Sequence record: MW749003.1 | Length of the DNA: 64,000 nucleotides | Reading direction: 5' to 3' (one strand) | Shown here: in pieces, positions 3,650 through 62,261 of the stretch | Numbering within the stretch: the first letter of the stretch is position 1 | Layout of the letters: each line of letters begins with the position of its first letter | Notes under the pieces: generated by a model | Told to the model about the DNA's origin: nothing | Seen by the model: only the letters and a program-made list of their open reading frames with translations | Databases searched by the model: none | Made by a program: the position numbers and the translations under genes

Positions 3650-3733
3650 TTTATTGAAAAATCTAAGATAATAGGTAACAAGCTATTACTTTAGATTAAA
3701 TAAAAATTACTTATATTACAGGAGGAATTTATC

Positions 3734-48524: not shown

Positions 48525-49229
48525 ATGTTAGTACCAAAGATGAATAATCCAAGTCTTATAAATGAAGATGAGTCTTATGAAGTTGTAATTGATTCTATTG
48601 ATGATCGTGCAGACTTTTTTAATTTTGAAATTACTTCTAATGAGAAGGAAAGACTAAAATTTATCAAACGAATTGAAAAGATAATTAGACGTTCATTTGA
48701 ATATAAAACTTATATTGGCTTTTTAAAAAATGAACTAGATTTGACAAAATGTACTTTCCTTCCAATGGTAGATACAAAGGAAATTAAAAAAGTTGGTTTA
48801 GAATTCCATCACTACCCTTTTACTCTTTTTGATATTGTAAGCATAGTACTAGATGAACATATTCTTGTTAATGGAGAAAAAAGAATTAATCCATTTGATA
48901 TTGCTGAAGAAGTCATGGAATTACATTATCAGAATTATATAGGGTTAGTTCCACTTACAAAAACTGTTCATGAGCTAGTACACTCTGGAAAGATTTATGT
49001 AAACCTTAACTATGTATTTGGTAACTACACTAAGTTTATTAATAAGTATGAGTCAGCCAATACTGAAAATTTCCAAGTATTATTAGGTAATTTAGAACAA
49101 CTTAGTCAGAAAGAAGATAGAGAAGGAAGTATTAATGGTGATATCCTAGACAAGAGTCTATTAAAACTTAATATTAAAGATATTGAAAATCCTAATAAGA
49201 TTGAAGTAGAAGATGAACTTCTTGCATAA
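48525..49229 (+). CDS. HNH/His-Me-finger-like protein (paralog of 60278-60943)
   Basis: C...LEFHHYPFT...GLVPLTKTVHELVH; late motif 48482-48493. Confidence 0.55.
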   Translation: MLVPKMNNPSLINEDESYEVVIDSIDDRADFFNFEITSNEKERLKFIKRIEKIIRRSFEYKTYIGFLKNELDLTKCTFLPMVDTKEIKKVGLEFHHYPFTLFDIVSIVLDEHILVNGEKRINPFDIAEEVMELHYQNYIGLVPLTKTVHELVHSGKIYVNLNYVFGNYTKFINKYESANTENFQVLLGNLEQLSQKEDREGSINGDILDKSLLKLNIKDIENPNKIEVEDELLA

Positions 49230-49299
49230 ATATTAAGTTTTAAAAAATTTATTTCTCTTTTTTATTTTAAAAATTACCCTGCATTTCAAACAATTTAAT

Positions 49300-49560
49300 A
49301 CGTGTGAGAGTAGCATCCTTTCACGATGTTCACACGGAAGGAGATAGTGAGAGGTCTCCTTCTTACTCAACTGTTCGCAATGTGATTTCTCCATTTAGTA
49401 CTCTGTGCATACCTCTATAGGTAAACTCTTTATGGGATGATCTTTGTCATTGGTTTTTGTTTCACCTCCGCATTAGTCACTGAGAGGTTTACCGATCCTC
49501 TTGGTGACAATGTGACTGTTCTAGTTGTTAATGTTGGTGCAATTCCAACAACAGTCACCA
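49300..49560 (+). ncRNA. Candidate late non-coding RNA ending in a tRNA-like minihelix with CCA
   Basis: Late motif AACA-ATTTAA-TA at 49289-49300; 110/260 GC (42%) by hand count; several stems and pseudoknots; T-arm, acceptor stem and ACCA at the 3' end. Confidence 0.6.
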
Positions 49561-49789
49561 AATCTAAAATATAAAATTAGCTTTTCATTGGCGGAAAACA
49601 CTTTTTTATATTTAAGAAAATATAACCATCAAACGTTTCTATTCCCTATTAATAGTTAGATGATAACGATCTTTCTATTACATCCAATCCGATACTCCTT
49701 CTAATTTTTATCGGTCTAATCAATTCTGTTCGCCATTGATTTAACTAATAAGATTTAGAAGGGGTAAATTATTGAAAGGAATGATTTAA

Positions 49790-50149
49790 ATGAATATAGT
49801 ACTTGAAGCTTTGCTTCTAAAAAAGTTTGAAAAAGAAATTGATGCATTACATACACATTTAAAAGCTGAAATAGAAAGAGCTATTAATATTTATAAAAAT
49901 TTAGCTATTGAAGAACTCTTAGATTATAATAAAAATTATGAACTACAAGAAGAATTCTCTTCTCCGTTTAAAAGCAAGTGGATTAAGAGTATTGAATATC
50001 TTACACATTTAAAAAGATCTATGAATTTTGGTCAATTTAATATTATTAAAGCAGATTTAGATGAGTTAGATAACCATCTTTCCCATCCAAAATTAAATAG
50101 AGACAAGACTATTATTCGTTCTTTAATTGATGAAATATTAAAATTTTAA
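49790..50149 (+). CDS. Hypothetical protein
   Basis: ORF with RBS GAAAGGA. Confidence 0.65.
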   Translation: MNIVLEALLLKKFEKEIDALHTHLKAEIERAINIYKNLAIEELLDYNKNYELQEEFSSPFKSKWIKSIEYLTHLKRSMNFGQFNIIKADLDELDNHLSHPKLNRDKTIIRSLIDEILKF

Positions 50150-50286
50150 TTTCATCATTTTTTATAAAAATAATCCTACACTTAACATATAAATATAAGG
50201 ACGACATATTTTAAAAATTTGTCTATGGACTTGTTAAGTATGGCAGTATTTAACAAGTCTAAAAATTTTATTCTTCTAGATTTTAT

Positions 50287-50359
50287 TGGGATATAGCCAA
50301 GTGGTAAGGCAGCATGCTGTTAACATGCCTATTCGTATGTTCGAATCATACTATCCCAG
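50287..50359 (+). tRNA. tRNA-Asn (GTT), CCA not encoded
   Basis: Acceptor TGGGATA/TATCCCA; anticodon arm GCATG-CTGTTAA-CATGC; T loop TTCGAAT; late motif 50184-50195. Confidence 0.9.
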
Positions 50360-50402
50360 TAAAGTCTAGAAGGGTTTTTACTGCCTATTTAGGAGGTCTA
50401 TA

Positions 50403-50543
50403 ATGTTTAATTTTTTAATAATCTTATTTGATATATTTATAATATTATGTATGTTACCGTTTCTATTTTTATTTAATTCAATGGGAAAAATGATCCTGCT
50501 AAAAAATAGGGAGGTGAAAAATATAGATGTTAAAAAAGATTAG
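50403..50543 (+). CDS. Small hydrophobic protein (46 aa)
   Basis: AGGAGG RBS; MFNFLIILFDIFIILCMLPFLFLF...; not in the ORF track. Confidence 0.4.
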   Translation: MFNFLIILFDIFIILCMLPFLFLFNSMGKMILLKNREVKNIDVKKD

Positions 50544-50856
50544 ATATTTTATTAAATCAGATGTAGAGTTACATTGTCGTAATATTTGGGAAGATGGAGT
50601 TAAAAGGATTGATGGTTTTAATTTTATAAGTAAGAAACCATTTTCTAATAGTTATCAGTATCATGCACCTCTAACTCTTGAATGTACCTATAGAATGTTA
50701 AAACTGATTCAAAGATCTATAAAAGAAAATAAGAGATCATTAACTTTTAAAATTAATCATGGTATGTCATGTAGTGAATCTATTACTATATGGAAAGGTA
50801 GTTTTAAAAAAGCTGAAAAATTAATGTTTGATTTAATAGAAAATATTCAAAAATAA
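50527..50856 (+). CDS. Hypothetical protein
   Basis: ORF with RBS GGAGGTG. Confidence 0.65.
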   Translation: MLKKIRYFIKSDVELHCRNIWEDGVKRIDGFNFISKKPFSNSYQYHAPLTLECTYRMLKLIQRSIKENKRSLTFKINHGMSCSESITIWKGSFKKAEKLMFDLIENIQK

Positions 50857-50944
50857 TATTAATTTTCAAATTAAAAACTAAAATAAGTAAACTAGATATT
50901 AGATAATCTAGTTTACTTATTAAATAATGGAGTGAGGAGTATAA

Positions 50945-51721
50945 ATGACAATGTTAACGGTTAAACAGAGAATCGGAAATCTACATGATAATATCAATAA
51001 TGCAAGAAGTAATATAGTAAGTCTCTCAGACAATATTAATGAAATTAAAGAAATCTACAAGGAAATAAATTCTTCTAAATCATTTTTACAAGATGTTGAA
51101 CAATTATTGGCTACAAAATATAATAATGAGATTAAGAAGATTTTAGAAAGTATTTTTATTTTTGATAATAAAACTTTAACAGGTTTCCATGAAAATACTG
51201 AAACTAATGTAGTTAATGTAAGTCTAAATTTATTTGATAAAATAACAAAAGATATTGATGAAGAATTTTTTGATATTAATATATTGGAAATTTTATCTTC
51301 ACAGAGAATTGAAATTGACTTTGATTCTAGAATTATTGAGAATGTTTCAATGAAATCAACTTTGGAATTCATATCTAGTATTATTAGACAAAAGATAGAA
51401 TCAAAAGAAGTATTAAATATTAGACTAAATCATAATTTAAAAAGACTAGATAAGAGTATTAAGATCACAAAAAAATCAAGAGAAATCAATCAAGAATCCA
51501 AGAATAAAATAAATGAGCAAATTATTGCCAATGAAATTTATATCACAAAGGCAAATAACTTTATTAAAGATCCACAGTTAAATATTTATATCCAAAAACT
51601 AGAGAAAGAAATAGAATCTAGTATGGAAAAAATAAAGAACTACTTAGATAGTTATTTTGGAATTGAATTTTTTATTCAAAGTAAAAATAATAGATTAAGT
51701 GAGTCATTATCCTCTAATTAG
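50945..51721 (+). CDS. Coiled-coil hypothetical protein
   Basis: Heptad-rich ORF with RBS. Confidence 0.6.
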   Translation: MTMLTVKQRIGNLHDNINNARSNIVSLSDNINEIKEIYKEINSSKSFLQDVEQLLATKYNNEIKKILESIFIFDNKTLTGFHENTETNVVNVSLNLFDKITKDIDEEFFDINILEILSSQRIEIDFDSRIIENVSMKSTLEFISSIIRQKIESKEVLNIRLNHNLKRLDKSIKITKKSREINQESKNKINEQIIANEIYITKANNFIKDPQLNIYIQKLEKEIESSMEKIKNYLDSYFGIEFFIQSKNNRLSESLSSN

Positions 51722-51760
51722 TTTATAACAATAAATTAAATAAATAAAGGAGGGTTATTA

Positions 51761-52180
51761 ATGACACCTGAACTTATGAATTTAATTTATTGTGTTATTC
51801 TAGCAGTAGTTGTATTAGCTGGAGGTTTTGGAGTTAGTGTCTTCCTAAAAAGACATAAAGAACTAGCTCCAGTCCTTCAAGAAGTAACTAATGCTCTCCC
51901 AACTGTATTAGGGGTACTAAAGGCTATTGTGACTAAGGGTGTTTCACAACATCCTGCGGCTCATGCTTTTGATGTTTTACAAAAAGTGGCTGAAGTTGCC
52001 GCTAAAGGTGTAGAGCAAGTGAGTCAAGGTACAGAGTTGCAATCTGAAGAAAAATTAAAGTTGGCTAAAGAAAACTTCCATGCTATTGCTGAAGGTATTG
52101 GTCTTAAGCCATCTGAACTTGATGAGAAGGCTGTTGAAACTCTCATTGAGAATGTAGTATTTCATTTCAACAAAAAATAA
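51761..52180 (+). CDS. Holin (LL-H-like)
   Basis: N-terminal TM; AAKGVEQ...SEEKLKLA...IENVV. Confidence 0.65.
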   Translation: MTPELMNLIYCVILAVVVLAGGFGVSVFLKRHKELAPVLQEVTNALPTVLGVLKAIVTKGVSQHPAAHAFDVLQKVAEVAAKGVEQVSQGTELQSEEKLKLAKENFHAIAEGIGLKPSELDEKAVETLIENVVFHFNKK

Positions 52181-52220
52181 TAAATTGCTCCTATAATCCT
52201 AAAAGATTATAGGAGTTTTT

Positions 52221-52233
52221 AAATATATATTAT
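52221..52233 (+). promoter_or_regulatory. Early promoter 13-mer
   Basis: Exact AAATATATATTAT just after a terminator hairpin. Confidence 0.7.
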
Positions 52234-52272
52234 TTCTTTGTAATTAGATAACAAAAATTAAGGGGGAATAAT

Positions 52273-52380
52273 ATGAATTATTCAGTACATATTGCGTATA
52301 AAGATTATAATGATGCTATTTCAAAAATGCAGTTATGGAAGGAAAACAAATACTATCTATCAAAGTTTATTAAGGAGTAA
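52273..52380 (+). CDS. 35-aa early protein
   Basis: RBS AAGGGGGA; MNYSVHIAYKDYND...; not in the ORF track. Confidence 0.55.
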   Translation: MNYSVHIAYKDYNDAISKMQLWKENKYYLSKFIKE

Positions 52381-52385
52381 AGTTA

Positions 52386-52565
52386 ATGGCTGTTAGTGAT
52401 ACTTTAGGAATGATTATGGGTGTATTATTCATATTCATATTTACTTATGGACTAGTTACTGTTAAAACTAAATTAGAGAAAGCTATATTCTCAATATTTG
52501 CATTGTTATTTATTGGATTCTTTATTTTTAATATTACTATGTTAGTATTAGAAACAACAAGATAA
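52386..52565 (+). CDS. 59-aa two-TM membrane protein
   Basis: RBS AAGGAG; MAVSDTLGMIMGVLFIFIFTYGL...; not in the ORF track. Confidence 0.6.
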   Translation: MAVSDTLGMIMGVLFIFIFTYGLVTVKTKLEKAIFSIFALLFIGFFIFNITMLVLETTR

Positions 52566-52584
52566 AATAAAGGAGTGATTAATA

Positions 52585-52953
52585 ATGGAACATTCATTTT
52601 GTCCAGAGTGTTATGAGATGAGAGATTTTAATGAAGTTTTTAAAAGTGATACATTTAATTTCTATGGACAAGAAATTGAAATTACTAGTCGTTTTCTAGA
52701 ATGTACAATATGTGGGGAAGAGATTACTGATCCAAAGAGAATTGATGAAAATTTTATTAAAGCTTATACTAAGTATAGGAATGAAAATAACCTTCTTCAT
52801 TCAGAAGAGATAAAAAATATTAGAGAAAAGAAAAACTTATCTCAAGAAGAATTTGCAGAAATACTTGGTTGCTCTAAAAGAACTATTCAAAGAATTGAAA
52901 CAGGAGCTTTACAAACTAAAGAACAAGATAAAAAAATAAGAGAATTAGTTTAA
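52585..52953 (+). CDS. MqsA-like protein (Zn ribbon plus Cro/C1 HTH)
   Basis: CPEC...CTICGEE, then IKNIREKKNLSQEEFAEILGCSKRTIQRIETG. Confidence 0.8.
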   Translation: MEHSFCPECYEMRDFNEVFKSDTFNFYGQEIEITSRFLECTICGEEITDPKRIDENFIKAYTKYRNENNLLHSEEIKNIREKKNLSQEEFAEILGCSKRTIQRIETGALQTKEQDKKIRELV

Positions 52954-52981
52954 ATAACTAATTAATTGGGAGAGAAAACAA

Positions 52982-53470
52982 ATGGCAATGACAGCGCAAA
53001 CAGAGGAATTAATGAAAATGAGAAATTTACGTTCTAGAGACATTCAAGGTAGAAAGGCAATCCTAACTGAAGATGTTGCATTCTTTACTTCTGTTTCTAG
53101 AAATGATAATAGTCTTGTTGTATTTGAAAAAGGAACAGAGGTTACTGGTGTTTATAGAATGACCAATACTGATTTATATATCTTTAGATTTAATGGTCTA
53201 TATAATTTTCCTATTAGATCATATAAATTTGAATGGAAAGACGAAAGAGAAGATGATAATTTATATAATGGGGGAAAAGACTTTACCTACTGTACTGAAT
53301 GTAATGAAGTTCTTAATAGTGAAGATGACTTATATCCAGATATGTGTAATGAATGTGGTACAGAAAAATCATATAATTTTAGAAAACCAATGAAATTTAG
53401 TAATGATAATGATGAATTTTACGAAATTACCAATTATGAACCAGTAGGATATTCAATTGATAATGACTAA
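52982..53470 (+). CDS. Hypothetical early protein with C-terminal Zn ribbon
   Basis: CTEC...CNECG. Confidence 0.65.
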   Translation: MAMTAQTEELMKMRNLRSRDIQGRKAILTEDVAFFTSVSRNDNSLVVFEKGTEVTGVYRMTNTDLYIFRFNGLYNFPIRSYKFEWKDEREDDNLYNGGKDFTYCTECNEVLNSEDDLYPDMCNECGTEKSYNFRKPMKFSNDNDEFYEITNYEPVGYSIDND

Positions 53471-53495
53471 GTAGATAATTCATGGGGAATTTAAA

Positions 53496-53540
53496 ATAAG
53501 AACAATCTTATATAGAGGTTGTTCTTATTTTTTTTTTTAT
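53496..53540 (+). terminator. Terminator hairpin with an embedded late promoter (53501-53512)
   Basis: 13-14-bp stem plus T run; AACA-ATCTTA-TA in left arm and loop. Confidence 0.65.
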
Positions 53541-53574
53541 ATGTTTAAAAATTATTTAATGGGGAGAATTATAA

Positions 53575-54825
53575 ATGAGAGAATCTAGAATAGTGGCGTG
53601 TAAAATATCAACATCTATTTCTTCTTTAATTGGAAATATTACTGGTTATGCTAGATATTTTTTATCTACAAAGTTTCCTCCTGATTTTTTTAAAGATACT
53701 CATATTAGTGGTGCTTTAAATGAAATAAGAATGGAAAATGTAGATATTGCAAAATTAAGAAAACCTACTCTAATTATGACACCTGAATACAATGGTGAAA
53801 CAGGATTTATGGAATTGTTACCGAACTGGCATACAACACAATATTTTACTTTTAAGAATCCAAGAAAGAAATACAATGGTGTACTATACGATAATAAAAA
53901 TGATATTTATATATACTCAATACCTGATAGAATTAAGGTAAACTTCAATATTAAAATAAAGTTACCATCTGAATTATATGCTTATGATGTATTACATTAT
54001 GTAAAACAAACATTTGAAACTGGTGGTTATTTCTATTTAAATGATGTAAGTTTACAAACAGAGTTACCAAAGATGTATACTAAAATTATAGAAAAAAAAT
54101 TAAATTTAGATCCATCTAAACCAGATGATAGAGAGAAGTTAGAGGAATACTACTTAGCTAACTCTTATAATGGGATCACAGAAAAAATTAATCAGTCTTC
54201 TGGCAATAGCCAGTATGCATACACTTATAAAACTAATATTCTTGTAAATATTCCTGAATTACCTACCTATGAGAAAAATGAGAATGGATTAATTACAGAT
54301 AGTACTACTGTAAATTTTCCTTTTTCATTTGAATTATGGTCTCATTCAAACTATATAATGGAAACTAAAGATGATCCAATAATAGATACAATTAGTAGTG
54401 AACCAACTATTGAGGGAAGAACTATGAAATACGATTTTTTCCTACCTACTCATTTTATAAAAGAACAATATGATAGTATGCATCTAATTGTGCATAAACA
54501 ATTCCTTCCAGATATTAATACAGAAGTTGACATACTAGATTTTAGTCCACTCATTAACTCCGAGTTAAGAGGAGTTATAGAGGAAGCACTAAAGCAAAAA
54601 TTAGATATGTCAAAACTCTTGAAAGCCAGAGTATTAGTAGATAACAAAGAGATTTATGAGGAACTCTTTAATGTGGATTGGAAGACTCTTAACTTAATAA
54701 CGAAAGAACCAATGTATAATATGACTTATACGCTAATGATTTATGGTGATTTAAAAATTTTAAACCTCATAAGTAAGTATATTGCGGAGGGCACAAAGGA
54801 GAAGATATCTGAAATAGAACTATAA
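53575..54825 (+). CDS. Putative virion structural protein
   Basis: 416-aa ORF under a late motif. Confidence 0.5.
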   Translation: MRESRIVACKISTSISSLIGNITGYARYFLSTKFPPDFFKDTHISGALNEIRMENVDIAKLRKPTLIMTPEYNGETGFMELLPNWHTTQYFTFKNPRKKYNGVLYDNKNDIYIYSIPDRIKVNFNIKIKLPSELYAYDVLHYVKQTFETGGYFYLNDVSLQTELPKMYTKIIEKKLNLDPSKPDDREKLEEYYLANSYNGITEKINQSSGNSQYAYTYKTNILVNIPELPTYEKNENGLITDSTTVNFPFSFELWSHSNYIMETKDDPIIDTISSEPTIEGRTMKYDFFLPTHFIKEQYDSMHLIVHKQFLPDINTEVDILDFSPLINSELRGVIEEALKQKLDMSKLLKARVLVDNKEIYEELFNVDWKTLNLITKEPMYNMTYTLMIYGDLKILNLISKYIAEGTKEKISEIEL

Positions 54826-54847
54826 AAATTAGAAAGATGGGATTCAC

Positions 54848-55132
54848 ATGAAATTAGAAGAGCTTTATCAGACACTTAAAAATGAATATCTTTCAGGTAA
54901 ATTTTATATTGAAGATAATAAAATTAATTGGATTTACAGTACTGAAGGTGTAAAAAGTGCTGAAGAAGCTGAAGACAGATGGCTTTCCTTTCTAGGTGCA
55001 AAAATTACCGCCGAGAATATCATTGAGGGAACAAACTTTGAAATTATTCAAAAGTTTGAAAGTAATAATAAGATTGGTTTTTCAATTAGAGAAAAACTAG
55101 TCAAAAAGAAACAAGAATGTTTCTACTATTAA
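54848..55132 (+). CDS. Hypothetical protein
   Basis: ORF. Confidence 0.6.
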   Translation: MKLEELYQTLKNEYLSGKFYIEDNKINWIYSTEGVKSAEEAEDRWLSFLGAKITAENIIEGTNFEIIQKFESNNKIGFSIREKLVKKKQECFYY

Positions 55133-55195
55133 AAAGGATAAAATATCTCCTATTTGGAGATATTTTATCTTCATACCGTATTATAGTAATATTTC

Positions 55196-55208
55196 AAATA
55201 TATATTAT
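55196..55208 (+). promoter_or_regulatory. Early promoter 13-mer
   Basis: Exact AAATATATATTAT. Confidence 0.7.
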
Positions 55209-55333
55209 ATTAATGTTAATAATAGGGATTAGCTAAGAGAAAGGAGAAACAGTATTAATGAATAAATTATATTTAAAATTACATAATATTAAAACATAAA
55301 ATATGGAAAAGAAGTGCATAAGGAGAGAATAAA

Positions 55334-55570
55334 ATGAGATCACAACTATTTAAAGATTTATTAAAAAAGTATAAAGAAGATAATGAGAATTTTAAATTAA
55401 GTGTTTGTGGCAGAGAGTATCGAATAACAGATGTTGTTAATGCTATTGAGATTTTTAGAGATGTTATTTTGGGAACTAAGTTTGATTGTAATTTTAGTGT
55501 ATCACAAGATGGAAGTATAATTACTGCTGAAATTTCTATATTTAAGATTGAAGACAAGGAAGTAATCTAA
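55334..55570 (+). CDS. Hypothetical early protein
   Basis: ORF with RBS AAGGAG. Confidence 0.65.
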   Translation: MRSQLFKDLLKKYKEDNENFKLSVCGREYRITDVVNAIEIFRDVILGTKFDCNFSVSQDGSIITAEISIFKIEDKEVI

Positions 55571-55596
55571 AGAGATAATATTGGGGGAATATAATA

Positions 55597-56052
55597 ATGT
55601 ACAGAGCAGATAAAGAATTCTATTCAAAGAAAATCGATAAAATGATATCTAATGTAATTGATGATTATACTGATGAGCCGTATTATGAATTCTTTGATAA
55701 AGGAATTAGTATTGAAAGTCTAATAAGAGAAGAGAATAGAAATAATCCTGTTGAAAAATCATTTTTAGAAGCATTAAAAGAGTTCAATATTAAATTAGAT
55801 GTTCCAATGTTTGCTCATCTAAAAGATAGAAATGATCCTTTTGATTTACTTAATGTATTTCTATTAAAAGAATATGTAGTGATATTGAGTTATTATTCAA
55901 TCGGAAGTGTAGTTGATACAGCATCAATTTATAAACTAAATGATCCTAAAGGTTATTTTAAAGAAGAATCCTTGGATGTTGAACCTGAATCAATTGATAT
56001 TCTATTTGAAAGAAAAAGAAATGAAGAATCAAAATTAATTAGTGTGGAATAA
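55597..56052 (+). CDS. Hypothetical early protein
   Basis: ORF with RBS. Confidence 0.65.
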   Translation: MYRADKEFYSKKIDKMISNVIDDYTDEPYYEFFDKGISIESLIREENRNNPVEKSFLEALKEFNIKLDVPMFAHLKDRNDPFDLLNVFLLKEYVVILSYYSIGSVVDTASIYKLNDPKGYFKEESLDVEPESIDILFERKRNEESKLISVE

Positions 56053-56112
56053 TAATGGATAAGTAAGGAATATTCCTTACTTATCCATCCTATTCTATTT
56101 GGAGGTATAATA

Positions 56113-56439
56113 ATGATAAAAATAGAAACAAAAAATGATACTGCAATGATTAAAGATGAATCTCTTAGGAAATCAACCGAAGAAGTATTAAATTATTATT
56201 TAAGTGCACTAGGAGTAGAAGACCTAAAGAATAATGAAACAGTTACTATTTATGCTATCAGGGAATCTGGTAAATTAGAAGATCATGTTGTTGCAATGGA
56301 AATTGAATATATTGAGAGACAAATTGGGAATGTTGTTTCAATAAATGTTATAGACCATGATAAAGATCATAATATCATCTATATAATCGATTATAACAAT
56401 ATTGTAGATCCAGAAATTAAATCAATAAGAATAGAATAG
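56113..56439 (+). CDS. Hypothetical protein
   Basis: ORF with RBS GGAGG. Confidence 0.65.
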   Translation: MIKIETKNDTAMIKDESLRKSTEEVLNYYLSALGVEDLKNNETVTIYAIRESGKLEDHVVAMEIEYIERQIGNVVSINVIDHDKDHNIIYIIDYNNIVDPEIKSIRIE

Positions 56440-56451
56440 GAGTTACTATAA

Positions 56452-56952
56452 ATGGTACAAATCCTTAATTTAAGTGAAGGATCAGCAAATGATAAAATAA
56501 AAGCAGTTGAAAGATTAAGAGATAAATTTGATAATAATAGTTTTACCTTATATACTATGGAAACTAAGATAATGGGAGTTGAAGATAGAATAACGAGAAT
56601 CTATCTAGGTGACTTATTATTAATGCATGCATCTAATCACCTTATTGTACCTGATAAAATGGGAAATCCTATGCAATCCAGCAATGGTGTAACGGTATTT
56701 AATGGATCTAGAGAACAACAAAGAATATTAGAAGTTGGTATTGGTGGATGGGATGCATTTAAATTCTGGATTTCCAATACTACCTTCTTATATGCATTTA
56801 GATGTAAAAATTTTAGAGATTTGTTAAATGGTTCAAAGCAAATTGATCCAATGATTAATAGTATCTTTTATAAATTTTTTAAAAATCCAGATGTTAGAGA
56901 ACAATTTAATCGTGTTTTAAATGAAGCTCGAATTAATATTAAGGAGAATTAA
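56452..56952 (+). CDS. Hypothetical protein
   Basis: ORF with RBS AGGAG. Confidence 0.65.
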   Translation: MVQILNLSEGSANDKIKAVERLRDKFDNNSFTLYTMETKIMGVEDRITRIYLGDLLLMHASNHLIVPDKMGNPMQSSNGVTVFNGSREQQRILEVGIGGWDAFKFWISNTTFLYAFRCKNFRDLLNGSKQIDPMINSIFYKFFKNPDVREQFNRVLNEARINIKEN

Positions 56953-57015
56953 TAGCTAAATATCTCTTTTAAAATAAAAAAAGAGTTACAAAAAAGAAAA
57001 TAAGAGGTAAAATAG

Positions 57016-57177
57016 ATGATCAAAGATTTAAAAACTATTGCTCTATGTTTAGTTGGGTTTATTATTATATTCTTTATAATTAAAACATTTATGTATTCTA
57101 ATGAGGAAGAAGAATGTTTAAAAAGAGATCATTATGTAGATGACTCTAAATGGGAAGAATATTGTAAAAATAAATAG
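57016..57177 (+). CDS. 53-aa membrane-anchored protein
   Basis: RBS GAGG; MIKDLKTIALCLVGFIIIFFII...; not in the ORF track. Confidence 0.55.
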   Translation: MIKDLKTIALCLVGFIIIFFIIKTFMYSNEEEECLKRDHYVDDSKWEEYCKNK

Positions 57178-57219
57178 AGAGAATAATCCTATATCATGCG
57201 ATATAGGATTATTTTTTTT

Positions 57220-57954
57220 TTATGCATAGATAAGATATTCAATTAATACTGTTTTAGTAAGAGAAGTAAGTGACTCTGAGTCAAAAGTTACTCTTGAAAA
57301 TAGCTCAGTATCTTTATAGGTATTATTAGCTTCATCATACTCAGCAAATACTAAGCCTAGTTCATTAATGAGATATCCTCTAGTTTCATCTGCATTAATT
57401 TTAAGCATAATCTTTTGATAAACTTCATTATTTTCTTTACTGAATACCCATTGAGGTTCTACTTCAAAAACTTTACCATAATATTCAGTAGTTCCATCAG
57501 ATCTTACTTCAGGCAGATAATAACGTTTTCTTTGTTCTTCTGAAAGTTCCTCAATAATAGAAGGATTATTTTCTTTTTCAGGAGTTTCATGCTTTGCTGG
57601 ATCCTGAACAACAAATGGAACTGGCTTTGCTAGATCTTCGTCACTATACAATGGTGCAAAAGGTTGGAAAGGTGCAGATTCAATATCAGCGCCACCTGAA
57701 CCTACTTTAAATAAGCAAATACTTCTATTTAAGTTAACTTTATAACCTGAAGCTTCTGCATCAATCGGTTTACCAAATAAACGCTCCAAAGCATATGTTC
57801 TTCCACGTAGTACAATTAGATTATCTTTTTCTAAAATTGTATTTCCAAATTCATCCATTACTTTTACTTTACCTTTTAATCCCATGCCAGAACTTGGCTG
57901 AGAAGTTTTATCTCCAATATTAATCCCATCATTGAATTTCAATTTTTCAGTCAT
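57220..57954 (-). CDS. Baseplate/tail-fibre attachment-like protein
   Basis: FKVGSGGAD...INELGL...LFSRVTF; ATG 57954 fits RBS GGAGG. Confidence 0.55.
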   Translation of the reverse strand: MTEKLKFNDGINIGDKTSQPSSGMGLKGKVKVMDEFGNTILEKDNLIVLRGRTYALERLFGKPIDAEASGYKVNLNRSICLFKVGSGGADIESAPFQPFAPLYSDEDLAKPVPFVVQDPAKHETPEKENNPSIIEELSEEQRKRYYLPEVRSDGTTEYYGKVFEVEPQWVFSKENNEVYQKIMLKINADETRGYLINELGLVFAEYDEANNTYKDTELFSRVTFDSESLTSLTKTVLIEYLIYA

Positions 57955-58003
57955 TATTGAAACCTCCAATTTATTATATTTACAAATAAATGTTTACTAT
58001 TCT

Positions 58004-60220
58004 TTAAACTTCCTCATAAATAACCTTATCTTCTTGATTCTCTTCAGATACAGTTATTTTTACTGACTCTTTCAATAACATAGTATCATTATTGTTTAAA
58101 CTAGACTCATAATTAAAGCGATCAGATAATTTATAGATATCATGTTGATTTATTTGAATATCTGAAATTTTATATTGATCATGATAACCTATACCTTCTA
58201 TTGGTGAGTGAATTGTATGAACTATTCGATCATCATTGAGAACCATATTAGAATCATCTTTATACAATTGAGATTGCCACCACATTACATCTCTTATATT
58301 TAATGGTACTTTGATATTAAGATTAGTATCTAAGATATTAGAAATATCTAATAGATCGATAGTGCTTGCAAAACTATGATCTGTTGTTGCACTAAAATCA
58401 TCAAATAATTTAAGAGTATTAAATGTTTTATCATCAAATGAAAATACAATATTAGCTGATAAAAGATCAATAGTGTATGATTTAAAAATACTAATAATTG
58501 TATAAAGATATTTTTCTATATATGAACTTAGTCCAATAAAATTATTATTTGTAAAATATCTTCTTACTTTCGGATCGCTAATATAGTTTCCAATTGATTC
58601 AGTTAATTCAAATACTCTGTCTTTATAAAAATTAGCTAATAATTTCTCACTATCTTTAATAGTATCTGGTACTTGAATATATTTATATAGATCATAATTT
58701 CTTGTTTTAATGTAATCACTAAATGTTTCACTATCACCATAAATAGAATTGCTGATTTTAGTCCTCATTTCAATATCCCATATCTCTTGAAGTTTTCTAT
58801 AGATATGATAGTTGTCAGTTTCTATAATCATATCTTCTAGATATTTTCGCATTTTCTCATTTGTATTAAAAACCTCTAAGAAATCTTCGATAGAATATTT
58901 TTCTTTCTCAAAACCTGTCATTTTAAAATTCTCAGTAAATTCAATAATTTCTTTATAATTATTGATTCTAGAAACATTTTTAATAGCTATCTCTTTAATT
59001 TCACTCATTATACTACTAATATCTATACTATTTTCTATGTCCCGATAGCCATAAATATAATTAATAACATCTGGATTCTTACTTATAGTATCCCTATAAC
59101 CATGACTTCTAATAACTAAAGATTGCAGAGCTACTATAGCATCATATATCTTGACTATATTTTCAGAAATACTTCCATTAATAAATCCAAAGTCAATACC
59201 TTCTTTTTGACTATAATCTAATTGAAACTTATTTAATATTGACATGAAATAAGCTAACCCAATTGTTTCATTCATAGCATCTATTGTAGTATCAACACTC
59301 ATATATTTTGAATTAATAAAATTAAAAGGAATACTCTTTACTTCATCTTCTGATGCTTGCCAATAAGGATCATTTGAAACAATTGAATTATAATCTAGAA
59401 TAATATCTTTTTTAAAATCAACTTCTTTATCAGCAGGTGTTTTAAAAAACATTAGATAAGGATCATTATAGTTTAATTTCCCAGTTCTTGGATCTGTACT
59501 ATAACCTTTTGCCAATACATATCTATATATCTCTATATTATCAAAACCAAATAAATTGATAATTTCAAGAATAGCCTGATTAGTTCCTTTATGAGATAAT
59601 AATGTATTAATCATTTTTAATAATCTTCTTTGATAATTAATTGGCATATCCTCAAAATAATCAAGACCAACTGAAATAAATGCATTTTTAAGAGTCCTCA
59701 TATCATAAACATCTATATTAAAGAAATTTTCCATCTTTCTAGTTAGATATCTCTGGACGGTAGAGAATATTAAGAACAATTTAATAAATCCTCTATACAT
59801 ATCTTGGTTTTTAAATGCCTTAGTAGAGGTAACTTTATTATGATAATTTAGTACTTCATAGTAGCACTCATAAAATAGATTCATTTCTTCTCTTGATAAA
59901 GTAGGTCTTGTGGCTAATAAAATATGAAGATCTTTGGCAGTTCTAGAAGTTAAATAGTCTATTCCCCAGTTATCATACAATTCTTTATAGTAACTATTTA
60001 ACTCAGTATAACCATCAATTATTTTTTTCTTAGTTTCTTCATCTACATCATATAAACCTAAACGTATATTTATGAATTCATTAGACAAACGATAAGAATT
60101 TGTAGTTTCCAAGGAATCAGCTAATTCAGTATCTTTTAGAATGAGACCATTGGCGAACTCAAGGACGCTTTCAATCTCATTTATATCCCCTTGTGAGAGG
60201 ACACTATAATTGCTTCCCAA
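58004..60220 (-). CDS. Baseplate wedge protein (T4 gp7 / P2 gpI-like)
   Basis: LSHKGTNQAILEIINLFG motif. Confidence 0.6.
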   Translation of the reverse strand: MGSNYSVLSQGDINEIESVLEFANGLILKDTELADSLETTNSYRLSNEFINIRLGLYDVDEETKKKIIDGYTELNSYYKELYDNWGIDYLTSRTAKDLHILLATRPTLSREEMNLFYECYYEVLNYHNKVTSTKAFKNQDMYRGFIKLFLIFSTVQRYLTRKMENFFNIDVYDMRTLKNAFISVGLDYFEDMPINYQRRLLKMINTLLSHKGTNQAILEIINLFGFDNIEIYRYVLAKGYSTDPRTGKLNYNDPYLMFFKTPADKEVDFKKDIILDYNSIVSNDPYWQASEDEVKSIPFNFINSKYMSVDTTIDAMNETIGLAYFMSILNKFQLDYSQKEGIDFGFINGSISENIVKIYDAIVALQSLVIRSHGYRDTISKNPDVINYIYGYRDIENSIDISSIMSEIKEIAIKNVSRINNYKEIIEFTENFKMTGFEKEKYSIEDFLEVFNTNEKMRKYLEDMIIETDNYHIYRKLQEIWDIEMRTKISNSIYGDSETFSDYIKTRNYDLYKYIQVPDTIKDSEKLLANFYKDRVFELTESIGNYISDPKVRRYFTNNNFIGLSSYIEKYLYTIISIFKSYTIDLLSANIVFSFDDKTFNTLKLFDDFSATTDHSFASTIDLLDISNILDTNLNIKVPLNIRDVMWWQSQLYKDDSNMVLNDDRIVHTIHSPIEGIGYHDQYKISDIQINQHDIYKLSDRFNYESSLNNNDTMLLKESVKITVSEENQEDKVIYEEV

Positions 60221-60277
60221 TCGTGTTCACCTCGCTTATTATTTATCTTTATGTTCAGAAATGGAGGAAATGTGAAA

Positions 60278-60943
60278 ATGATAAAAAAAATTAATAGTCC
60301 TGCTAAAGTCAATAATATTGTAAATATTCAAAGCGTTCAGAATAACGATAATATTTTATTAAAGAATATGGATGGCTACTTCCAAGAGAAATTTTATTAT
60401 ACTGATATTTATGATGATACTAAAATGAAAAAACTAGTTGGATCAATTAAGAGTCAAATTAGATCAAGTGATGAGTATTCTCACTATATTGGCTTTCTTA
60501 AAAACGAATTAGGATTATCTCATTGTGCTGTTTTAGGAAATGTATCAGCAGAAGATGCGTCATTAGAGTTTCACCATTATCCTTTTACTATACATGACAT
60601 AATTAATCTGTCAATTAGTAGACATATTCTTCTAGGAAAAAAATTTAATTCTTTTACTATTATTAAAGAAGTATTAGATGATCATTATAATAATATAATA
60701 GGTTTAGTACCATTATCATTAACTGTTCATGAATTAGTACATGCTGGTGAAATATTTGTTAATTTGAACCAAGTTTATGGTGATATAAATGAATTTAATA
60801 AAAAATACTCGTTTGCTATGACTGATGATATGATTGAAAAATTTAATAAATTAATAGAACTAAGCGAGAGTAATGCACCATATAGTGAAAATAATATTCT
60901 TAAAAAAATATATGATAATAATGAAGATAACGATAGAACTTAA
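60278..60943 (+). CDS. HNH/His-Me-finger-like protein (paralog of 48525-49229)
   Basis: LEFHHYPFT...GLVPLSLTVHELVH. Confidence 0.55.
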   Translation: MIKKINSPAKVNNIVNIQSVQNNDNILLKNMDGYFQEKFYYTDIYDDTKMKKLVGSIKSQIRSSDEYSHYIGFLKNELGLSHCAVLGNVSAEDASLEFHHYPFTIHDIINLSISRHILLGKKFNSFTIIKEVLDDHYNNIIGLVPLSLTVHELVHAGEIFVNLNQVYGDINEFNKKYSFAMTDDMIEKFNKLIELSESNAPYSENNILKKIYDNNEDNDRT

Positions 60944-60966
60944 TCTATCGTTATCTTCATTATCTA

Positions 60967-61239
60967 TTAACTAATGAAAGTTTTCCATTCATTTCCTTTA
61001 TCATCTAGAATTTTACTTTCTGTCGTTCCACTATCATACATTGACCAATCGTGAAACCTTTCAGCTGATTCATGAGAATCTTTATCACATAATGCTTCAT
61101 AATATAAAGTTTTATCATCATCATATACACGTACTCTTTCTACGTTTTTACCTTTATAATCATCTGTGACTTTTTCCAAAACATCTGATTCTCTATTTCT
61201 TTTTTCTGATAGAAAGTCTCTTACTACTTTAAATCCCAT
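60967..61239 (-). CDS. Hypothetical early protein
   Basis: ORF with RBS GGAG. Confidence 0.6.
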   Translation of the reverse strand: MGFKVVRDFLSEKRNRESDVLEKVTDDYKGKNVERVRVYDDDKTLYYEALCDKDSHESAERFHDWSMYDSGTTESKILDDKGNEWKTFIS

Positions 61240-61299
61240 TTTAAATCATCTCCATAATAATATTATTACTTTAATTTTCCGAATATTAAGAATCTCTAT

Positions 61300-61705
61300 T
61301 TATCTAAATATTGTCCAGCAATACGTCCTCCTTCCTTTAAAATACGTTTCAGCAATCTTCTTATATGTCCAGTCTGGGAGTTCTTTAATAAGCTTTTCTA
61401 ATTTTTCAATATCCTGGATTTTTACTTTTGTAATTTATATTTTTTACTTTAATATAATAATGGACTCCTGCTTTGGTAACATTTAGTTCCTTGGCAAGTT
61501 TATCAAGAGTCCAGTCTGGATGTTCTTTAATAAGTTTCTTTAATCTTTCAATATCAATTGCTGGATTTTTACTTTTGTAATTTATATTTTTTGTTTTAAT
61601 ATAATAATGGACTGCTGCTGTAGTGACATTTAGTTCCTTGGCAAGTTTATCAAGAGTCCAGTCTGGGTGTTCTTTAATAAGCTTTTTTAATTTTTCACCG
61701 TCAAT
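61300..61705 (-). repeat. Tandem 147-bp repeat (2 intact units plus 1 frameshifted unit)
   Basis: 49-aa unit LKKLIKEHPDWTLDKLAKELNVT..VHYYIK.KNINYKSKNP. Confidence 0.85.
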
Positions 61706-61711
61706 TTTCAT
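61406..61711 (-). CDS. Tandem helix-turn-helix protein
   Basis: PDWTLDKLAKELNVTxAxVHYYIK twice. Confidence 0.75.
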   Translation of the reverse strand: MKIDGEKLKKLIKEHPDWTLDKLAKELNVTTAAVHYYIKTKNINYKSKNPAIDIERLKKLIKEHPDWTLDKLAKELNVTKAGVHYYIKVKNINYKSKNPGY

Positions 61712-62261
61712 TTACTTTCTCCTTAGCAAGTGTTTTAAGTTTCAATAGACATTTTTCTTTCCTTCTTTGCTCTTTTAACATTTCATCAATAACTCGTTTT
61801 TCACGTTCAAGATAAATTTCATAATACTCATTAATTAAATCAAAACTAAAATTAACTTGTGGATAATATTGTTTCATTTCTCTTTCAAAGATTACAGCTG
61901 GAACCGTAGTATTTCTAAATCCTTCAAGGGCTTTCCCAATCGCCTTTAATCTATTACAATCACCATCTACTCTCTCAAAATTAACATAATCCATTTCTTG
62001 TCCAAACTCTTCTGCTAAATTACTAGTAAAACCAATAAGTATCTCAATATCCCTTTTTAATTCTCGAATATCAATATAATATGAATTATTTTTTTCTTGA
62101 TCCCCCAATTGATAATTACTACCTTTATGTCTCAATGTCCTATTAGTATCATCAATAACAATGGGTCTCAATTTACCAAATATATTTGCATCATTTAACT
62201 CCTTTACTAAATTCTCTAATGCTTCTAATGTAATATCTTTTCCCAAGTGAAAAACCTCCAT
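61701..62261 (-). CDS. Hypothetical early protein
   Basis: ORF downstream of an early motif. Confidence 0.65.
   Translation of the reverse strand: MEVFHLGKDITLEALENLVKELNDANIFGKLRPIVIDDTNRTLRHKGSNYQLGDQEKNNSYYIDIRELKRDIEILIGFTSNLAEEFGQEMDYVNFERVDGDCNRLKAIGKALEGFRNTTVPAVIFEREMKQYYPQVNFSFDLINEYYEIYLEREKRVIDEMLKEQRRKEKCLLKLKTLAKEKVNEN

What the first reader, a model, noticed from the sequence alone, without database searches (positions are those of the whole stretch)
49289..49560. Candidate new ncRNA: pseudoknot-rich body ending in an armless tRNA-like minihelix with CCA
A late motif places +1 at about 49300, and the next 260 nt are 42% GC with no credible ORF. Helices seen: 49301-07/49330-36; 49337-44/49355-62; loop pairing 49308-13/49363-68; a 12-bp stem 49476-87/49497-508 whose loop pairs with 49420-25. 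The 3' end reads GACTGTT (49514-20), a 12-nt linker, T-arm GTTGG-TGCAATT-CCAAC, AACAGTC, A, CCA (49560). That is an acceptor stem plus T-arm in exact tRNA register, with no D or anticodon arm. It could be a substrate or decoy for RNase P, CCA enzyme, synthetases or anti-phage tRNA nucleases, or a built-in processing signal for a larger RNA. It lies about 700 nt from the real tRNA.
Basis: partly seen in the sequence, partly recalled or inferred. Interest (0 to 1): 0.85.

Follow-up and report, generated by a model that had tools for sequence, protein, structure and literature searches.

The report
Phage late RNA ending in tRNA-like minihelix
A Bacillus jumbo phage (PBS1/AR9 group) makes, late in infection, a 261-base GC-rich folded RNA whose last 47 bases copy the acceptor stem and T-arm of a tRNA, most likely as a built-in cutting and end-protection signal; it is real and unannotated, but it occurs in only one phage species, so its fold and function remain unproven.

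Summary
The start at 49300 is a published late, TEX-enriched 5' end of phage AR9, which is identical here. An unbiased composition scan delimits a GC island at 49301-49559 (42.5% GC against 27.8%), which runs from that start to the CCA.

The 3' module has a 7-bp stem, a 12-nt linker, a 5-bp/7-nt T-arm, then A and CCA, in exact tRNA register. Its 17-nt T-arm is identical to T-arms of many real phage tRNAs. The full motif is expected about 0.0003 times per genome.

It matches no Rfam family: not tRNA, tmRNA, YrlA, GOLLD, ROOL or group I intron. It has no homologue outside four near-identical genomes, so no covariation test is possible. The pseudoknots are only complementarities, with borderline statistics.

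In related phages the same locus is the tRNA island, once with a GOLLD RNA. No terminator separates the RNA from ORFan g243.

Best reading: a lineage-specific late RNA or leader with a tRNA-derived processing and end-forming module. RNase P would cut at 49513/49514. Novelty: new variant of a known kind. Interest is moderate.

The parts
49289..49300 (+). AR9-type late promoter AACAATTTAATA. The last A (49300) is the transcription start.
   Evidence: Identical to the AR9 sequence upstream of the late TSS at AR9 207979, which is TEX-enriched 2.02x with step height 73 (PMC5312081 Table S3). Coordinate mapping.
49301..49368 (+). 5' domain. P1 is 49301-07/49330-36. The inner hairpin P1a is 49313-17/49325-29 with loop CUUUCAC. 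P2 is 49337-45/49354-62 with loop AGUGAGAG. There are two candidate tertiary pairings: loop-loop 49318-24/49347-53 (7 bp) and 49308-13/49363-68 (6 bp).
   Evidence: Searches give pair probabilities 0.9, 0.94 and 0.59. Loop-loop complementarity of at least 7 bp has p = 0.0055. P1 plus P1a also has 7+5 bp/7-nt-loop minihelix geometry.
49369..49469 (+). Central region with a low-confidence fold. It contains CACCUCC (49463-69) and the site of the 4-nt deletion in phage Goe21 (49427-30).
   Evidence: The unpaired probability of CACCUCC is about 0.2-0.8.
49470..49513 (+). Long hairpin P5: 12 bp at 49476-87/49497-508, with a possible extension 49470-75/49509-14. It would be the 3'-terminal hairpin of the 214-nt body after a cut at 49513/49514.
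   Evidence: Pair probability 1.0 for the 12 bp. The extension appears in the MFE and centroid structures but has low probability.
49514..49560 (+). Armless tRNA-like minihelix: acceptor 49514-20/49550-56, linker 49521-32 (CUAGUUGUUAAU), T-arm 49533-37/49545-49 with loop UGCAAUU, discriminator A49557, and CCA 49558-60. The predicted RNase P site is between U49513 and G49514.
   Evidence: it is the only acceptor+T-arm+NCCA match in the window; z = -3.3; the strict T-arm motif occurs only here and in tRNA-Asn in the 252-kb genome; the full motif is expected about 0.0003 times per genome; the 17-mer equals T-arms of real phage tRNAs; the PBS1 change A49551G turns U-A into U-G.
49561..49789 (+). 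AT-rich remainder of the intergenic region, the leader of g243. It has a roughly 30-bp imperfect hairpin at 49693-49765 just before the g243 ribosome-binding site, and no intrinsic terminator.
   Evidence: z = -3.4; no terminator; 26.6% GC.
49790..50149 (+). g243, a 119-aa ORFan, probably co-transcribed from the 49300 start.
   Evidence: No homologue outside the species. Late expression and no TSS of its own in Table S3.
50286..50360 (+). tRNA-Asn (GUU), the only canonical tRNA of the phage. CCA is not encoded. It has its own strong late TSS near 50195.

Best explanation
Window 49300-49560 is a discrete, late-transcribed, structured RNA of the PBS1/AR9 phage species. It sits in what is the tRNA island in related jumbo phages.

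Its last 47 nt are a tRNA-derived acceptor-stem/T-arm minihelix that serves as a processing and end-forming signal. The proposed steps are:
1. Host RNase P recognises the 12-bp coaxial acceptor/T stack with U(-1), G+1:C72 and A73-CCA, and cuts between U49513 and G49514.
2. This releases a 214-nt body RNA that ends at the foot of the very stable P5 hairpin.
3. The minihelix 3' end is trimmed to, or kept at, CCA like a CCA-encoding pre-tRNA. This separates both pieces from the downstream g243 message, which has no terminator in front of it.

Shown: the TSS; the GC island limits; the helices; the tRNA register; the T-arm identity with real tRNAs; the absence of a terminator; and the tRNA-island context.

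Inferred: RNase P cleavage, the 3' end at CCA, and any function of the 214-nt body. The body may fold compactly or self-associate through its complementary loops.
For: - The TSS at 49300 is published and TEX-enriched.
- The maximal GC-rich segment is 49301-49559, at 42.5% GC against 27.8% for the window. The flanks are 14% and 26.6% GC.
- Apart from three unexamined stretches (record 76974-77288, 78218-78470 and 54792-55201), every other non-coding GC island in the 252-kb genome lies between the annotated pieces of a split gene (terminase, DnaB, topoisomerase IV, RNA polymerase beta); two of them coincide with Rfam group I intron matches, which were sought only in record 50001-62100.
- The + strand folds better than the - strand.
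- The minihelix is the only acceptor+T-arm+NCCA match in the window.
- The strict T-arm motif occurs twice in the whole genome, in tRNA-Asn and here.
- The composite motif is expected about 0.0003 times per genome.
- The T-arm 17-mer is identical to T-arms of ARAGORN-called phage tRNAs.
- The single substitution in PBS1 keeps the pair as U-G.
- No intrinsic terminator lies between 49300 and g243.
- In relatives, the slot after the g242 homologue holds tRNA clusters. In L012 a GOLLD RNA ends 6 nt before tRNA-Ser, the same 'structured RNA followed by an RNase P site' layout.
- Seventeen unrelated phage contexts with the same T-arm have short-linker outer stems, against 2.8 expected. Some sit directly before a ribosome-binding site or a U-tract.
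- Precedent: plant mitochondrial t-elements are cut by RNase P and RNase Z to form mRNA ends (PMC1920247).
Against: - No 3'-end or cleavage data are available.
- The TSS step height is modest (73, against 2101 for the tRNA promoter), so this is not a very abundant RNA.
- The outer stem can extend by 2 bp into -1/-2 and A73/C74, which partly buries the RCCA end.
- The T-loop has G where tRNAs normally have U55, and there is no D-loop partner, so the elbow that RNase P reads may be imperfect.
- The RNA exists in one species only, so there is no covariation.
- Local substitution density is not significantly below that of the flanks: 1 SNP plus 1 indel in 261 nt, against about 1 per 80 nt.
- The z-score ranks only 49th of 492 windows.
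- The body's function is unknown.
Confidence: 0.45

Rival explanations
1. It is simply the structured 5' leader of g243, a 490-nt UTR. On this reading it acts in cis on g243 translation or stability, and the tRNA-like hairpin is just a stable stem or protein-binding site, not a cleavage signal.
For: - g243 has no TSS of its own in Table S3 and is expressed late.
- No terminator lies between 49300 and g243.
- The rest of the leader is also structured, with a roughly 30-bp hairpin just before the g243 ribosome-binding site.
- The AR9 authors note long UTRs of up to 491 nt.
- In other phages the same T-arm minihelix sits directly before a ribosome-binding site.
Against: - The GC island stops sharply at the CCA, 229 nt before the start codon.
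- The exact tRNA register plus A-CCA is unnecessary for a mere stem.
- The other long AR9 leader in the window (start 59786) is unstructured, with z = +0.3.
Confidence: 0.2
2. It is a decaying relic of a once larger tRNA/ncRNA island. On this reading the minihelix is a tRNA gene that lost its D and anticodon arms, is still transcribed, and has no function.
For: - Relatives carry 3-10 tRNAs at this locus, whereas AR9/PBS1 keep one.
- The T-arm is identical to real tRNA T-arms.
- Relatives also carry irregular tRNA-like units that ARAGORN does not call.
- There is no significant excess conservation.
- The RNA is lineage-restricted.
Against: - A 42% GC segment with intact perfect helices, intact 7+5 register and an intact CCA is unexpected for neutral decay in a 28% GC uracil-DNA genome.
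- The body (49300-49513) shows no tRNA similarity.
- It has a dedicated late promoter with a primary, TEX-enriched 5' end.
Confidence: 0.15
3. It is a tRNA mimic acting in trans. It could be a decoy for enzymes that act on tRNA acceptor ends (defence nucleases or nucleotidyltransferase toxins, the CCA-adding enzyme, 3' exonucleases). Alternatively the minihelix could be a retained 3' 'telomere' that keeps the whole 261-nt RNA repaired and stable.
For: - The ACCA end is encoded, unlike the phage's own tRNA-Asn.
- The GC island includes the minihelix up to the CCA.
- Phage tRNA islands are linked to counter-defence (general knowledge, not tested here).
Against: - There is no anticodon arm, so anticodon nucleases, the best-known tRNA-targeting defences, cannot be decoyed.
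- Abundance is moderate.
- No partner gene is evident. g242 and g243 have no recognisable domains.
Confidence: 0.1
4. The region encodes one or more small proteins: 38 aa at 49304-49420, or 45 aa at 49437-49574 with a hydrophobic N-terminus.
For: The open frames exist. The 45-aa ORF begins with a membrane-like stretch.
Against: - Neither ORF has a Shine-Dalgarno sequence, whereas neighbouring genes have strong ones.
- The first ORF starts 4 nt after the TSS.
- GC content and + strand G-U-dependent folding are typical of RNA genes.
- The PBS1 change is non-synonymous in the 45-aa frame.
Confidence: 0.03

Closest known systems
t-elements of plant mitochondria and the MALAT1/mascRNA arrangement (tRNA-like processing signals inside longer transcripts)
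   Same: A partial tRNA mimic with an acceptor-like stem and a conserved T-arm is embedded in a longer transcript. RNase P is predicted to make the 3' end of the upstream RNA, and the small tRNA-like piece carries a CCA end (PMC1920247; mascRNA from general knowledge).
   Different: This one is in a bacteriophage. The CCA is genome-encoded. There is no D or anticodon arm at all, only a 12-nt linker. Cleavage has not been shown.
GOLLD and ROOL RNAs (large structured phage RNAs near tRNA islands)
   Same: Phage-encoded and of unknown function. They lie in or next to tRNA islands and are sometimes covalently linked to tRNAs (bioRxiv 10.1101/2024.12.08.627333). A related phage has GOLLD at the equivalent locus. 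GOLLD expression rises during phage lysis, and this RNA has a late promoter.
   Different: There is no Rfam match. This RNA is 261 nt, against about 580-800 nt. There is no detectable sequence or structural homology, and no evidence of multimerisation.
tmRNA tRNA-like domain
   Same: It has an acceptor stem, a T-arm and an unstemmed D-loop-like linker without an anticodon arm, and it sits in a pseudoknot-bearing RNA ending in CCA.
   Different: In tmRNA the acceptor stem is made from the 5' and 3' ends of the whole molecule, and there is a tag reading frame. Here the stem is local, there is no tag ORF, and neither ARAGORN nor Rfam calls a tmRNA.
Acceptor/T-arm minihelix model substrates, and the RNase P-processed C4 RNA precursor of phages P1/P7 (general knowledge)
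   Same: It has the same minimal architecture known to be enough for RNase P, the CCA-adding enzyme and some synthetases. C4 RNA is a precedent for a phage regulatory RNA matured by RNase P.
   Different: The model substrates are laboratory constructs, and C4 RNA belongs to an unrelated E. coli phage. No sequence relationship exists.

Membership tests
tRNA (RF00005) | Cloverleaf with acceptor, D, anticodon and T arms; called by ARAGORN or by Rfam at 29 bits or more | tested here: not met
   ARAGORN calls only tRNA-Asn. Rfam gives 11.6 bits for the T-arm plus the 3' acceptor half only. The D and anticodon arms are replaced by a 12-nt linker.
tRNA (RF00005) | T-arm of 5 bp with a 7-nt loop, G53-C61, T54, C56 and A58, stacked on a 7-bp acceptor stem, then a discriminator and CCA | tested here: met
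   Position 55 is G rather than U, as in a class of real phage tRNAs.
tmRNA (RF00023) | tRNA-like domain formed by the molecule's two ends, a tag reading frame, and a model match | tested here: not met
   No ARAGORN tmRNA. No Rfam hit at E up to 10. The 5' end does not pair with the 3' end.
YrlA / Y RNA-like (RF02553) | Match to the covariance model (tRNA-like module plus Ro-binding stem) | tested here: not met
   No hit in the window at E up to 10. A sub-threshold hit (34.5 bits against a cut-off of 69) exists only in relative L014.
GOLLD (RF02032) / ROOL | Match to the covariance model; length about 580-800 nt | tested here: not met
   No hit. As a positive control, GOLLD scores 226.8 bits in relative L012.
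GOLLD (RF02032) / ROOL | Phage-encoded and adjacent to a tRNA island | tested here: met
   literature.
Group I intron (RF00028) | Model match; interrupts a gene | tested here: not met
   No hit here. Five introns are detected elsewhere in the same genome as a positive control. The flanking genes g242 and g243 are intact.
tRNA-like processing element (t-element / mascRNA type) | Acceptor-like stem plus conserved T-arm embedded in a longer primary transcript | tested here: met
   The TSS lies 214 nt upstream. Structure. No terminator before g243.
tRNA-like processing element (t-element / mascRNA type) | Mature RNA ends coincide with the element's ends; cleavage by RNase P and/or RNase Z | not testable with these tools
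   This needs the raw reads of PMC5312081, RACE or Northern blots, or an RNase P assay. Only indirect support exists: the GC island ends at the CCA.
Intrinsic terminator | GC-rich hairpin followed by a U-tract | tested here: not met
   The scan finds none between 49300 and 49790. The minihelix is followed by AAAUCUAAAA.

The most novel reading that the evidence does not exclude
The 261-nt RNA may be a compact functional counterpart of GOLLD/ROOL: a late phage RNA of the tRNA island that self-assembles. The RNA would carry a covalently attached tRNA-like handle.

In addition, the handle may belong to a wider, undescribed class of armless T-arm minihelices (T-loop UGCAAUU, linker of about 9-19 nt) that phages use as RNA punctuation marks before genes and at transcript ends.
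Probability: 0.12. Interest if true: 0.85.

Novelty: new variant of a known kind. Interest (0 to 1): 0.55.

Why it matters
If the minihelix is cut by RNase P, it would be a clear bacterial-virus example of the strategy used by plant mitochondrial t-elements and MALAT1: a piece of tRNA is borrowed to make RNA ends without a terminator. Here the polymerase is the AR9 non-virion RNA polymerase, whose termination signals are poorly known.

It also marks the PBS1/AR9 tRNA island as a place where unrelated structured RNAs replace one another: GOLLD in one relative, tRNA arrays in others, and this RNA here. That offers a small, genetically tractable B. subtilis system for asking what tRNA-island RNAs do.

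The same T-arm recurs in short-linker minihelices of unrelated phages, which hints at a broader motif worth a dedicated search.

Tried and rejected
1. Homologue search. All of the following found only AR9, PBS1, Goe21 and Internexus:
- blastn 'distant' against phages and plasmids;
- blastn and nhmmer against 16 loci from relatives and against the rest of the genome;
- exact and gapped patterns in IMG/VR, GTDB genomes and JGI metagenomes.

2. Synteny route. g242 homologues at 39-73% identity never have this RNA next to them. g243 has no homologues at all.

3. BpSp has a late-promoter-like motif and about 100 non-coding nt after its g242 homologue, and it shares CACCTCC, GCATTA and TAGTGAGA with the window. 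Alignment and k-mer sharing are at chance level, so I dropped both the homology idea and the anti-Shine-Dalgarno 'seed' idea.

4. Purifying selection. SNP density in the RNA is lower than in the flanks but not significantly so.

5. Genome-wide z-score. The region is in the top 10% only, because terminator hairpins dominate the ranking (the first attempt timed out).

6. Group I intron, tmRNA, YrlA, GOLLD and ROOL are all excluded by Rfam, with positive controls.

7. Host-derived DNA: no match found.

8. The phage 'ribonuclease Z' annotation could have been a dedicated processing enzyme. The protein fits the Apyc1 anti-Pycsar phosphodiesterase family better.

9. The other long late leader, which starts at 59786, is unstructured and antisense to a gene.

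10. I did not build covariance models. With one effective sequence they would add little.

Full report
IDENTITY OF THE WINDOW. The region is 100% identical to Bacillus phage vB_BspM_Internexus and 99.2-99.8% identical to AR9, PBS1 and Goe21 (genus Takahashivirus). These are uracil-DNA jumbo phages with two multisubunit RNA polymerases. Window 49200 corresponds to AR9 207879. None of the records annotates anything between g242 (48525-49229) and g243 (49790-50149).

THE OBSERVATION. The nested ones are thermodynamically robust: P1 0.9, inner hairpin 0.94, P2 0.59, the 12-bp stem 1.0, acceptor 0.67, T-arm 0.75. The + strand folds to -76.9 kcal/mol (z = -2.8). The - strand reaches only z = -1.5, as expected if G-U pairs matter. 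The motif AACA-N6-TA is not itself enriched in the window. However, Lavysh et al. (PMC5312081, Table S3) mapped a late primary 5' end at AR9 207979, which is window 49300. It has the upstream sequence found here, step height 73, step factor 37.5 and TEX enrichment 2.02, and it is oddly labelled 'tRNA'. So the +1 is experimental.

A DISCRETE GC ISLAND. The window is 27.8% GC (sd 4.6% for 261-nt windows). The RNA is 42.1% GC, like tRNA-Asn at 42.7%. The promoter stretch is 14% and the downstream leader 26.6%. A maximal-segment scan, blind to the finding, returns 49301-49559. Across the 252-kb genome, the other GC islands outside long ORFs lie mostly between the annotated pieces of split genes (terminase, RNA polymerase beta, DnaB, topoisomerase IV). 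Rfam detects group I introns in the one stretch where I looked, record 50001-62100. This is therefore the one GC-rich non-coding island that I found no known RNA family to explain. By z-score it ranks only 49th of 492 windows, because terminator hairpins dominate. By raw MFE it ranks second.

THE tRNA-LIKE END. A scan for a 7-bp stem, a linker, a 5-bp/7-nt-loop hairpin, the in-register 3' strand and N-CCA finds one hit in the window, at 49514-49560. A strict T-arm motif (G53-C61, loop T[TG]C[AG]AN[CT]) occurs only twice in the whole genome, in tRNA-Asn and here. About 0.9 chance T-arms are expected per genome. Only 4.4% of such hairpins have an in-register 7-bp outer stem, and CCA has probability 0.007, which gives about 0.0003 for the whole motif.

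The exact 17-mer GTTGGTGCAATTCCAAC occurs in 99 IMG/VR stretches. Many are bona fide tRNAs (Met, Cys, Tyr, Phe, Asn). Of the 18 that ARAGORN calls, 17 have AG instead of GG in the D-loop. So UGCAAUU is a genuine T-loop variant in phage tRNAs.

The element also has U at -1, a G+1:C72 pair, A73 and CCA, which are the features of a good RNase P substrate (sequence; general knowledge). Two caveats apply. The stem can extend by 2 bp into -2/-1 and A73/C74. There is no D-loop partner, although the linker contains an AG, as do most of the other short-linker elements.

The only substitution in the RNA among the four genomes, A49551G in PBS1, converts U-A to U-G in the acceptor stem. Goe21 has a 4-nt deletion in a poorly paired stretch.

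THE BODY. No Rfam family matches at E up to 10. Overall, matches of at least 6 bp among unpaired segments are only marginally enriched (6 against 2.2 expected, 26 of 500 shuffles).

The whole 7-nt loop of the inner 5' hairpin (CUUUCAC, 49318-24) is complementary to the loop of the adjacent hairpin (GUGAGAG, 49347-53), with p = 0.0055. P1 and P2 abut without a spacer, so this pairing could be intermolecular. That is inference only.

The CACCUCC motif looked like an anti-Shine-Dalgarno seed, but there is no support beyond its presence.

COMPARATIVE DATA. There is no homologue outside the species in any searched collection. g243 is an ORFan. g242 belongs to a widespread jumbo-phage family (phrog_12252). 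Covariation analysis is therefore impossible, and SNP density gives no significant signal.

The locus itself is informative. In metagenomic relatives with 57-73% identical g242, the space downstream holds the tRNA cluster:
- L016 and L010 carry 8-10 tRNAs each.
- L014 carries 7-8 tRNAs plus a sub-threshold YrlA-like hit.
- L011 carries tRNAs plus irregular tRNA-like units.
- L012 carries a GOLLD RNA (226.8 bits) that ends 6 nt before tRNA-Ser.
GOLLD and ROOL are described as phage RNAs of unknown function near tRNA islands, sometimes with linked tRNAs.

TRANSCRIPT ARCHITECTURE. No intrinsic terminator lies between 49300 and g243. g243 has no TSS of its own in Table S3 and is expressed late. 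The 229-nt AT-rich remainder is also structured (z = -3.4), with a long hairpin before the g243 ribosome-binding site. The primary transcript therefore probably runs into g243. The GC-rich RNA is either a leader domain or is cut out.

A cut at 49513/49514 would leave the 214-nt body ending at the base of the strongest hairpin, which is a natural exonuclease block.

The same T-arm occurs in 17 short-linker (9-19 nt) minihelix contexts in unrelated phage contigs, against 2.8 expected (maximum 9 in 200 shuffles). One group sits between a terminator and the ribosome-binding site of a conserved 121-aa ORF, with compensatory changes in the outer stem. Others are followed by a U-tract.

CONCLUSION. 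The interpretation as a new ncRNA is partly supported. The most likely mechanism is a tRNA-derived processing and end-forming module on a lineage-specific late RNA (confidence 0.45). The rivals are a plain cis-acting leader (0.2), a relic of tRNA-island decay (0.15), a trans-acting tRNA mimic (0.1) and small proteins (0.03). It is not a member of any known RNA family. It works most like t-elements and mascRNA, and it occupies the niche of GOLLD and ROOL.

Noticed in passing
L012 4825-5269 (+) (Logan SRR12632055_905): A GOLLD RNA (RF02032, 226.8 bits, E 2e-63) lies in a related 198-kb jumbo phage, downstream of the g242 homologue. It ends 6 nt before tRNA-Ser, and a late-promoter-like AACATATAAATA sits about 390 nt upstream.
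   Followed up: partly
window 50197-50360: tRNA-Asn exists as two very different alleles. The window and PBS1 share one; AR9 and Goe21 share the other. They differ by dozens of partly compensatory changes, including the acceptor stem. A 61-nt indel (50200-50260) carrying a 16-bp hairpin is present only in the window and PBS1.
   Followed up: partly
L021-L119 (IMG/VR contigs): The T-arm GTTGG-UGCAAUU-CCAAC marks a class of phage tRNAs with G at position 55. Of the 18 that ARAGORN calls, 17 have AG instead of the universal GG in the D-loop, which suggests a covarying 18:55 tertiary pair. Many others with this T-arm look like tRNAs but are not called by ARAGORN.
   Followed up: partly
L027 about 8030-8095, L030 about 11797-11850, L032, L053, L085, L094, L105 about 3660-3720, L115 about 555-615: An armless minihelix lies between a terminator hairpin and the ribosome-binding site of a conserved ORF of about 121 aa (MIKKLESLEKYVITPNVRFYGG...). 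It has a 6-7-bp stem, a 10-12-nt A-rich linker and the same 17-nt T-arm. The outer stem shows compensatory changes between contigs. There is no Rfam or PHROG match. Similar elements followed by U-tracts occur in L068 and L104.
   Followed up: partly
L011 4340-4462, 4568-4653 and 4740-4825; L014 6485-6615 and 6940-7025: Irregular tRNA-like units occur in the tRNA islands of relatives. They have a good T-arm and acceptor stem, with an oversized or missing anticodon arm. One gives a weak tmRNA-clan hit and one a sub-threshold YrlA hit (34.5 bits against a cut-off of 69).
   Followed up: partly
L123 45922-46644 (Internexus record 171821-172543, outside the window): The gene annotated 'putative ribonuclease Z' passes the Pfam threshold for the Apyc1 anti-Pycsar family (51.6 bits against 50). 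It is far below the NCBIfam RNase Z cut-offs (about 49 bits against 252-293). It is more likely a cyclic-nucleotide phosphodiesterase.
   Followed up: yes
L126 2801-6243 (Internexus record about 52800-56240, outside the window): Five group I intron matches (45-104 bits) lie within 3.5 kb on the - strand, among fragments of RNA polymerase beta-subunit genes. These account for several of the genome's non-coding GC islands.
   Followed up: partly
L007 4742-4895 (phage BpSp): Directly after the g242 homologue come a late-promoter-like AACAATTTATTA, about 100 non-coding nt with a 10-bp stem, and then a strong bidirectional terminator hairpin. The promoter position is conserved, but the cargo is unrelated to the window RNA.
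   Followed up: yes
window 49693-49765: A roughly 30-bp imperfect hairpin (CUCCUUCUAAU...AUUUAGAAGGGG) lies immediately upstream of the g243 ribosome-binding site. The 250-nt stretch has z = -3.4. It may be an RNase III site or a translational control element.
   Followed up: no
window 10330-11549: This is the strongest GC-rich segment of the window: 42% GC over 1.2 kb, with a local peak of 54%. It lies inside a 1921-aa ORF (7085-12850), and its cause is unknown.
   Followed up: no
window about 49227 (- strand): PMC5312081 lists a late antisense TSS at AR9 207906 (-). It starts in the promoter-proximal AT-rich spacer and runs antisense into g242.
   Followed up: no
L010 4598-5149, L011 5020-5571, L013 4221-4784: In several relatives a 2H-phosphoesterase / LigT-like gene (2',5' RNA ligase superfamily, with a weak Acb1 match) lies next to the g242 homologue or the tRNA island. 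AR9/PBS1 have no such gene at this locus.
   Followed up: partly
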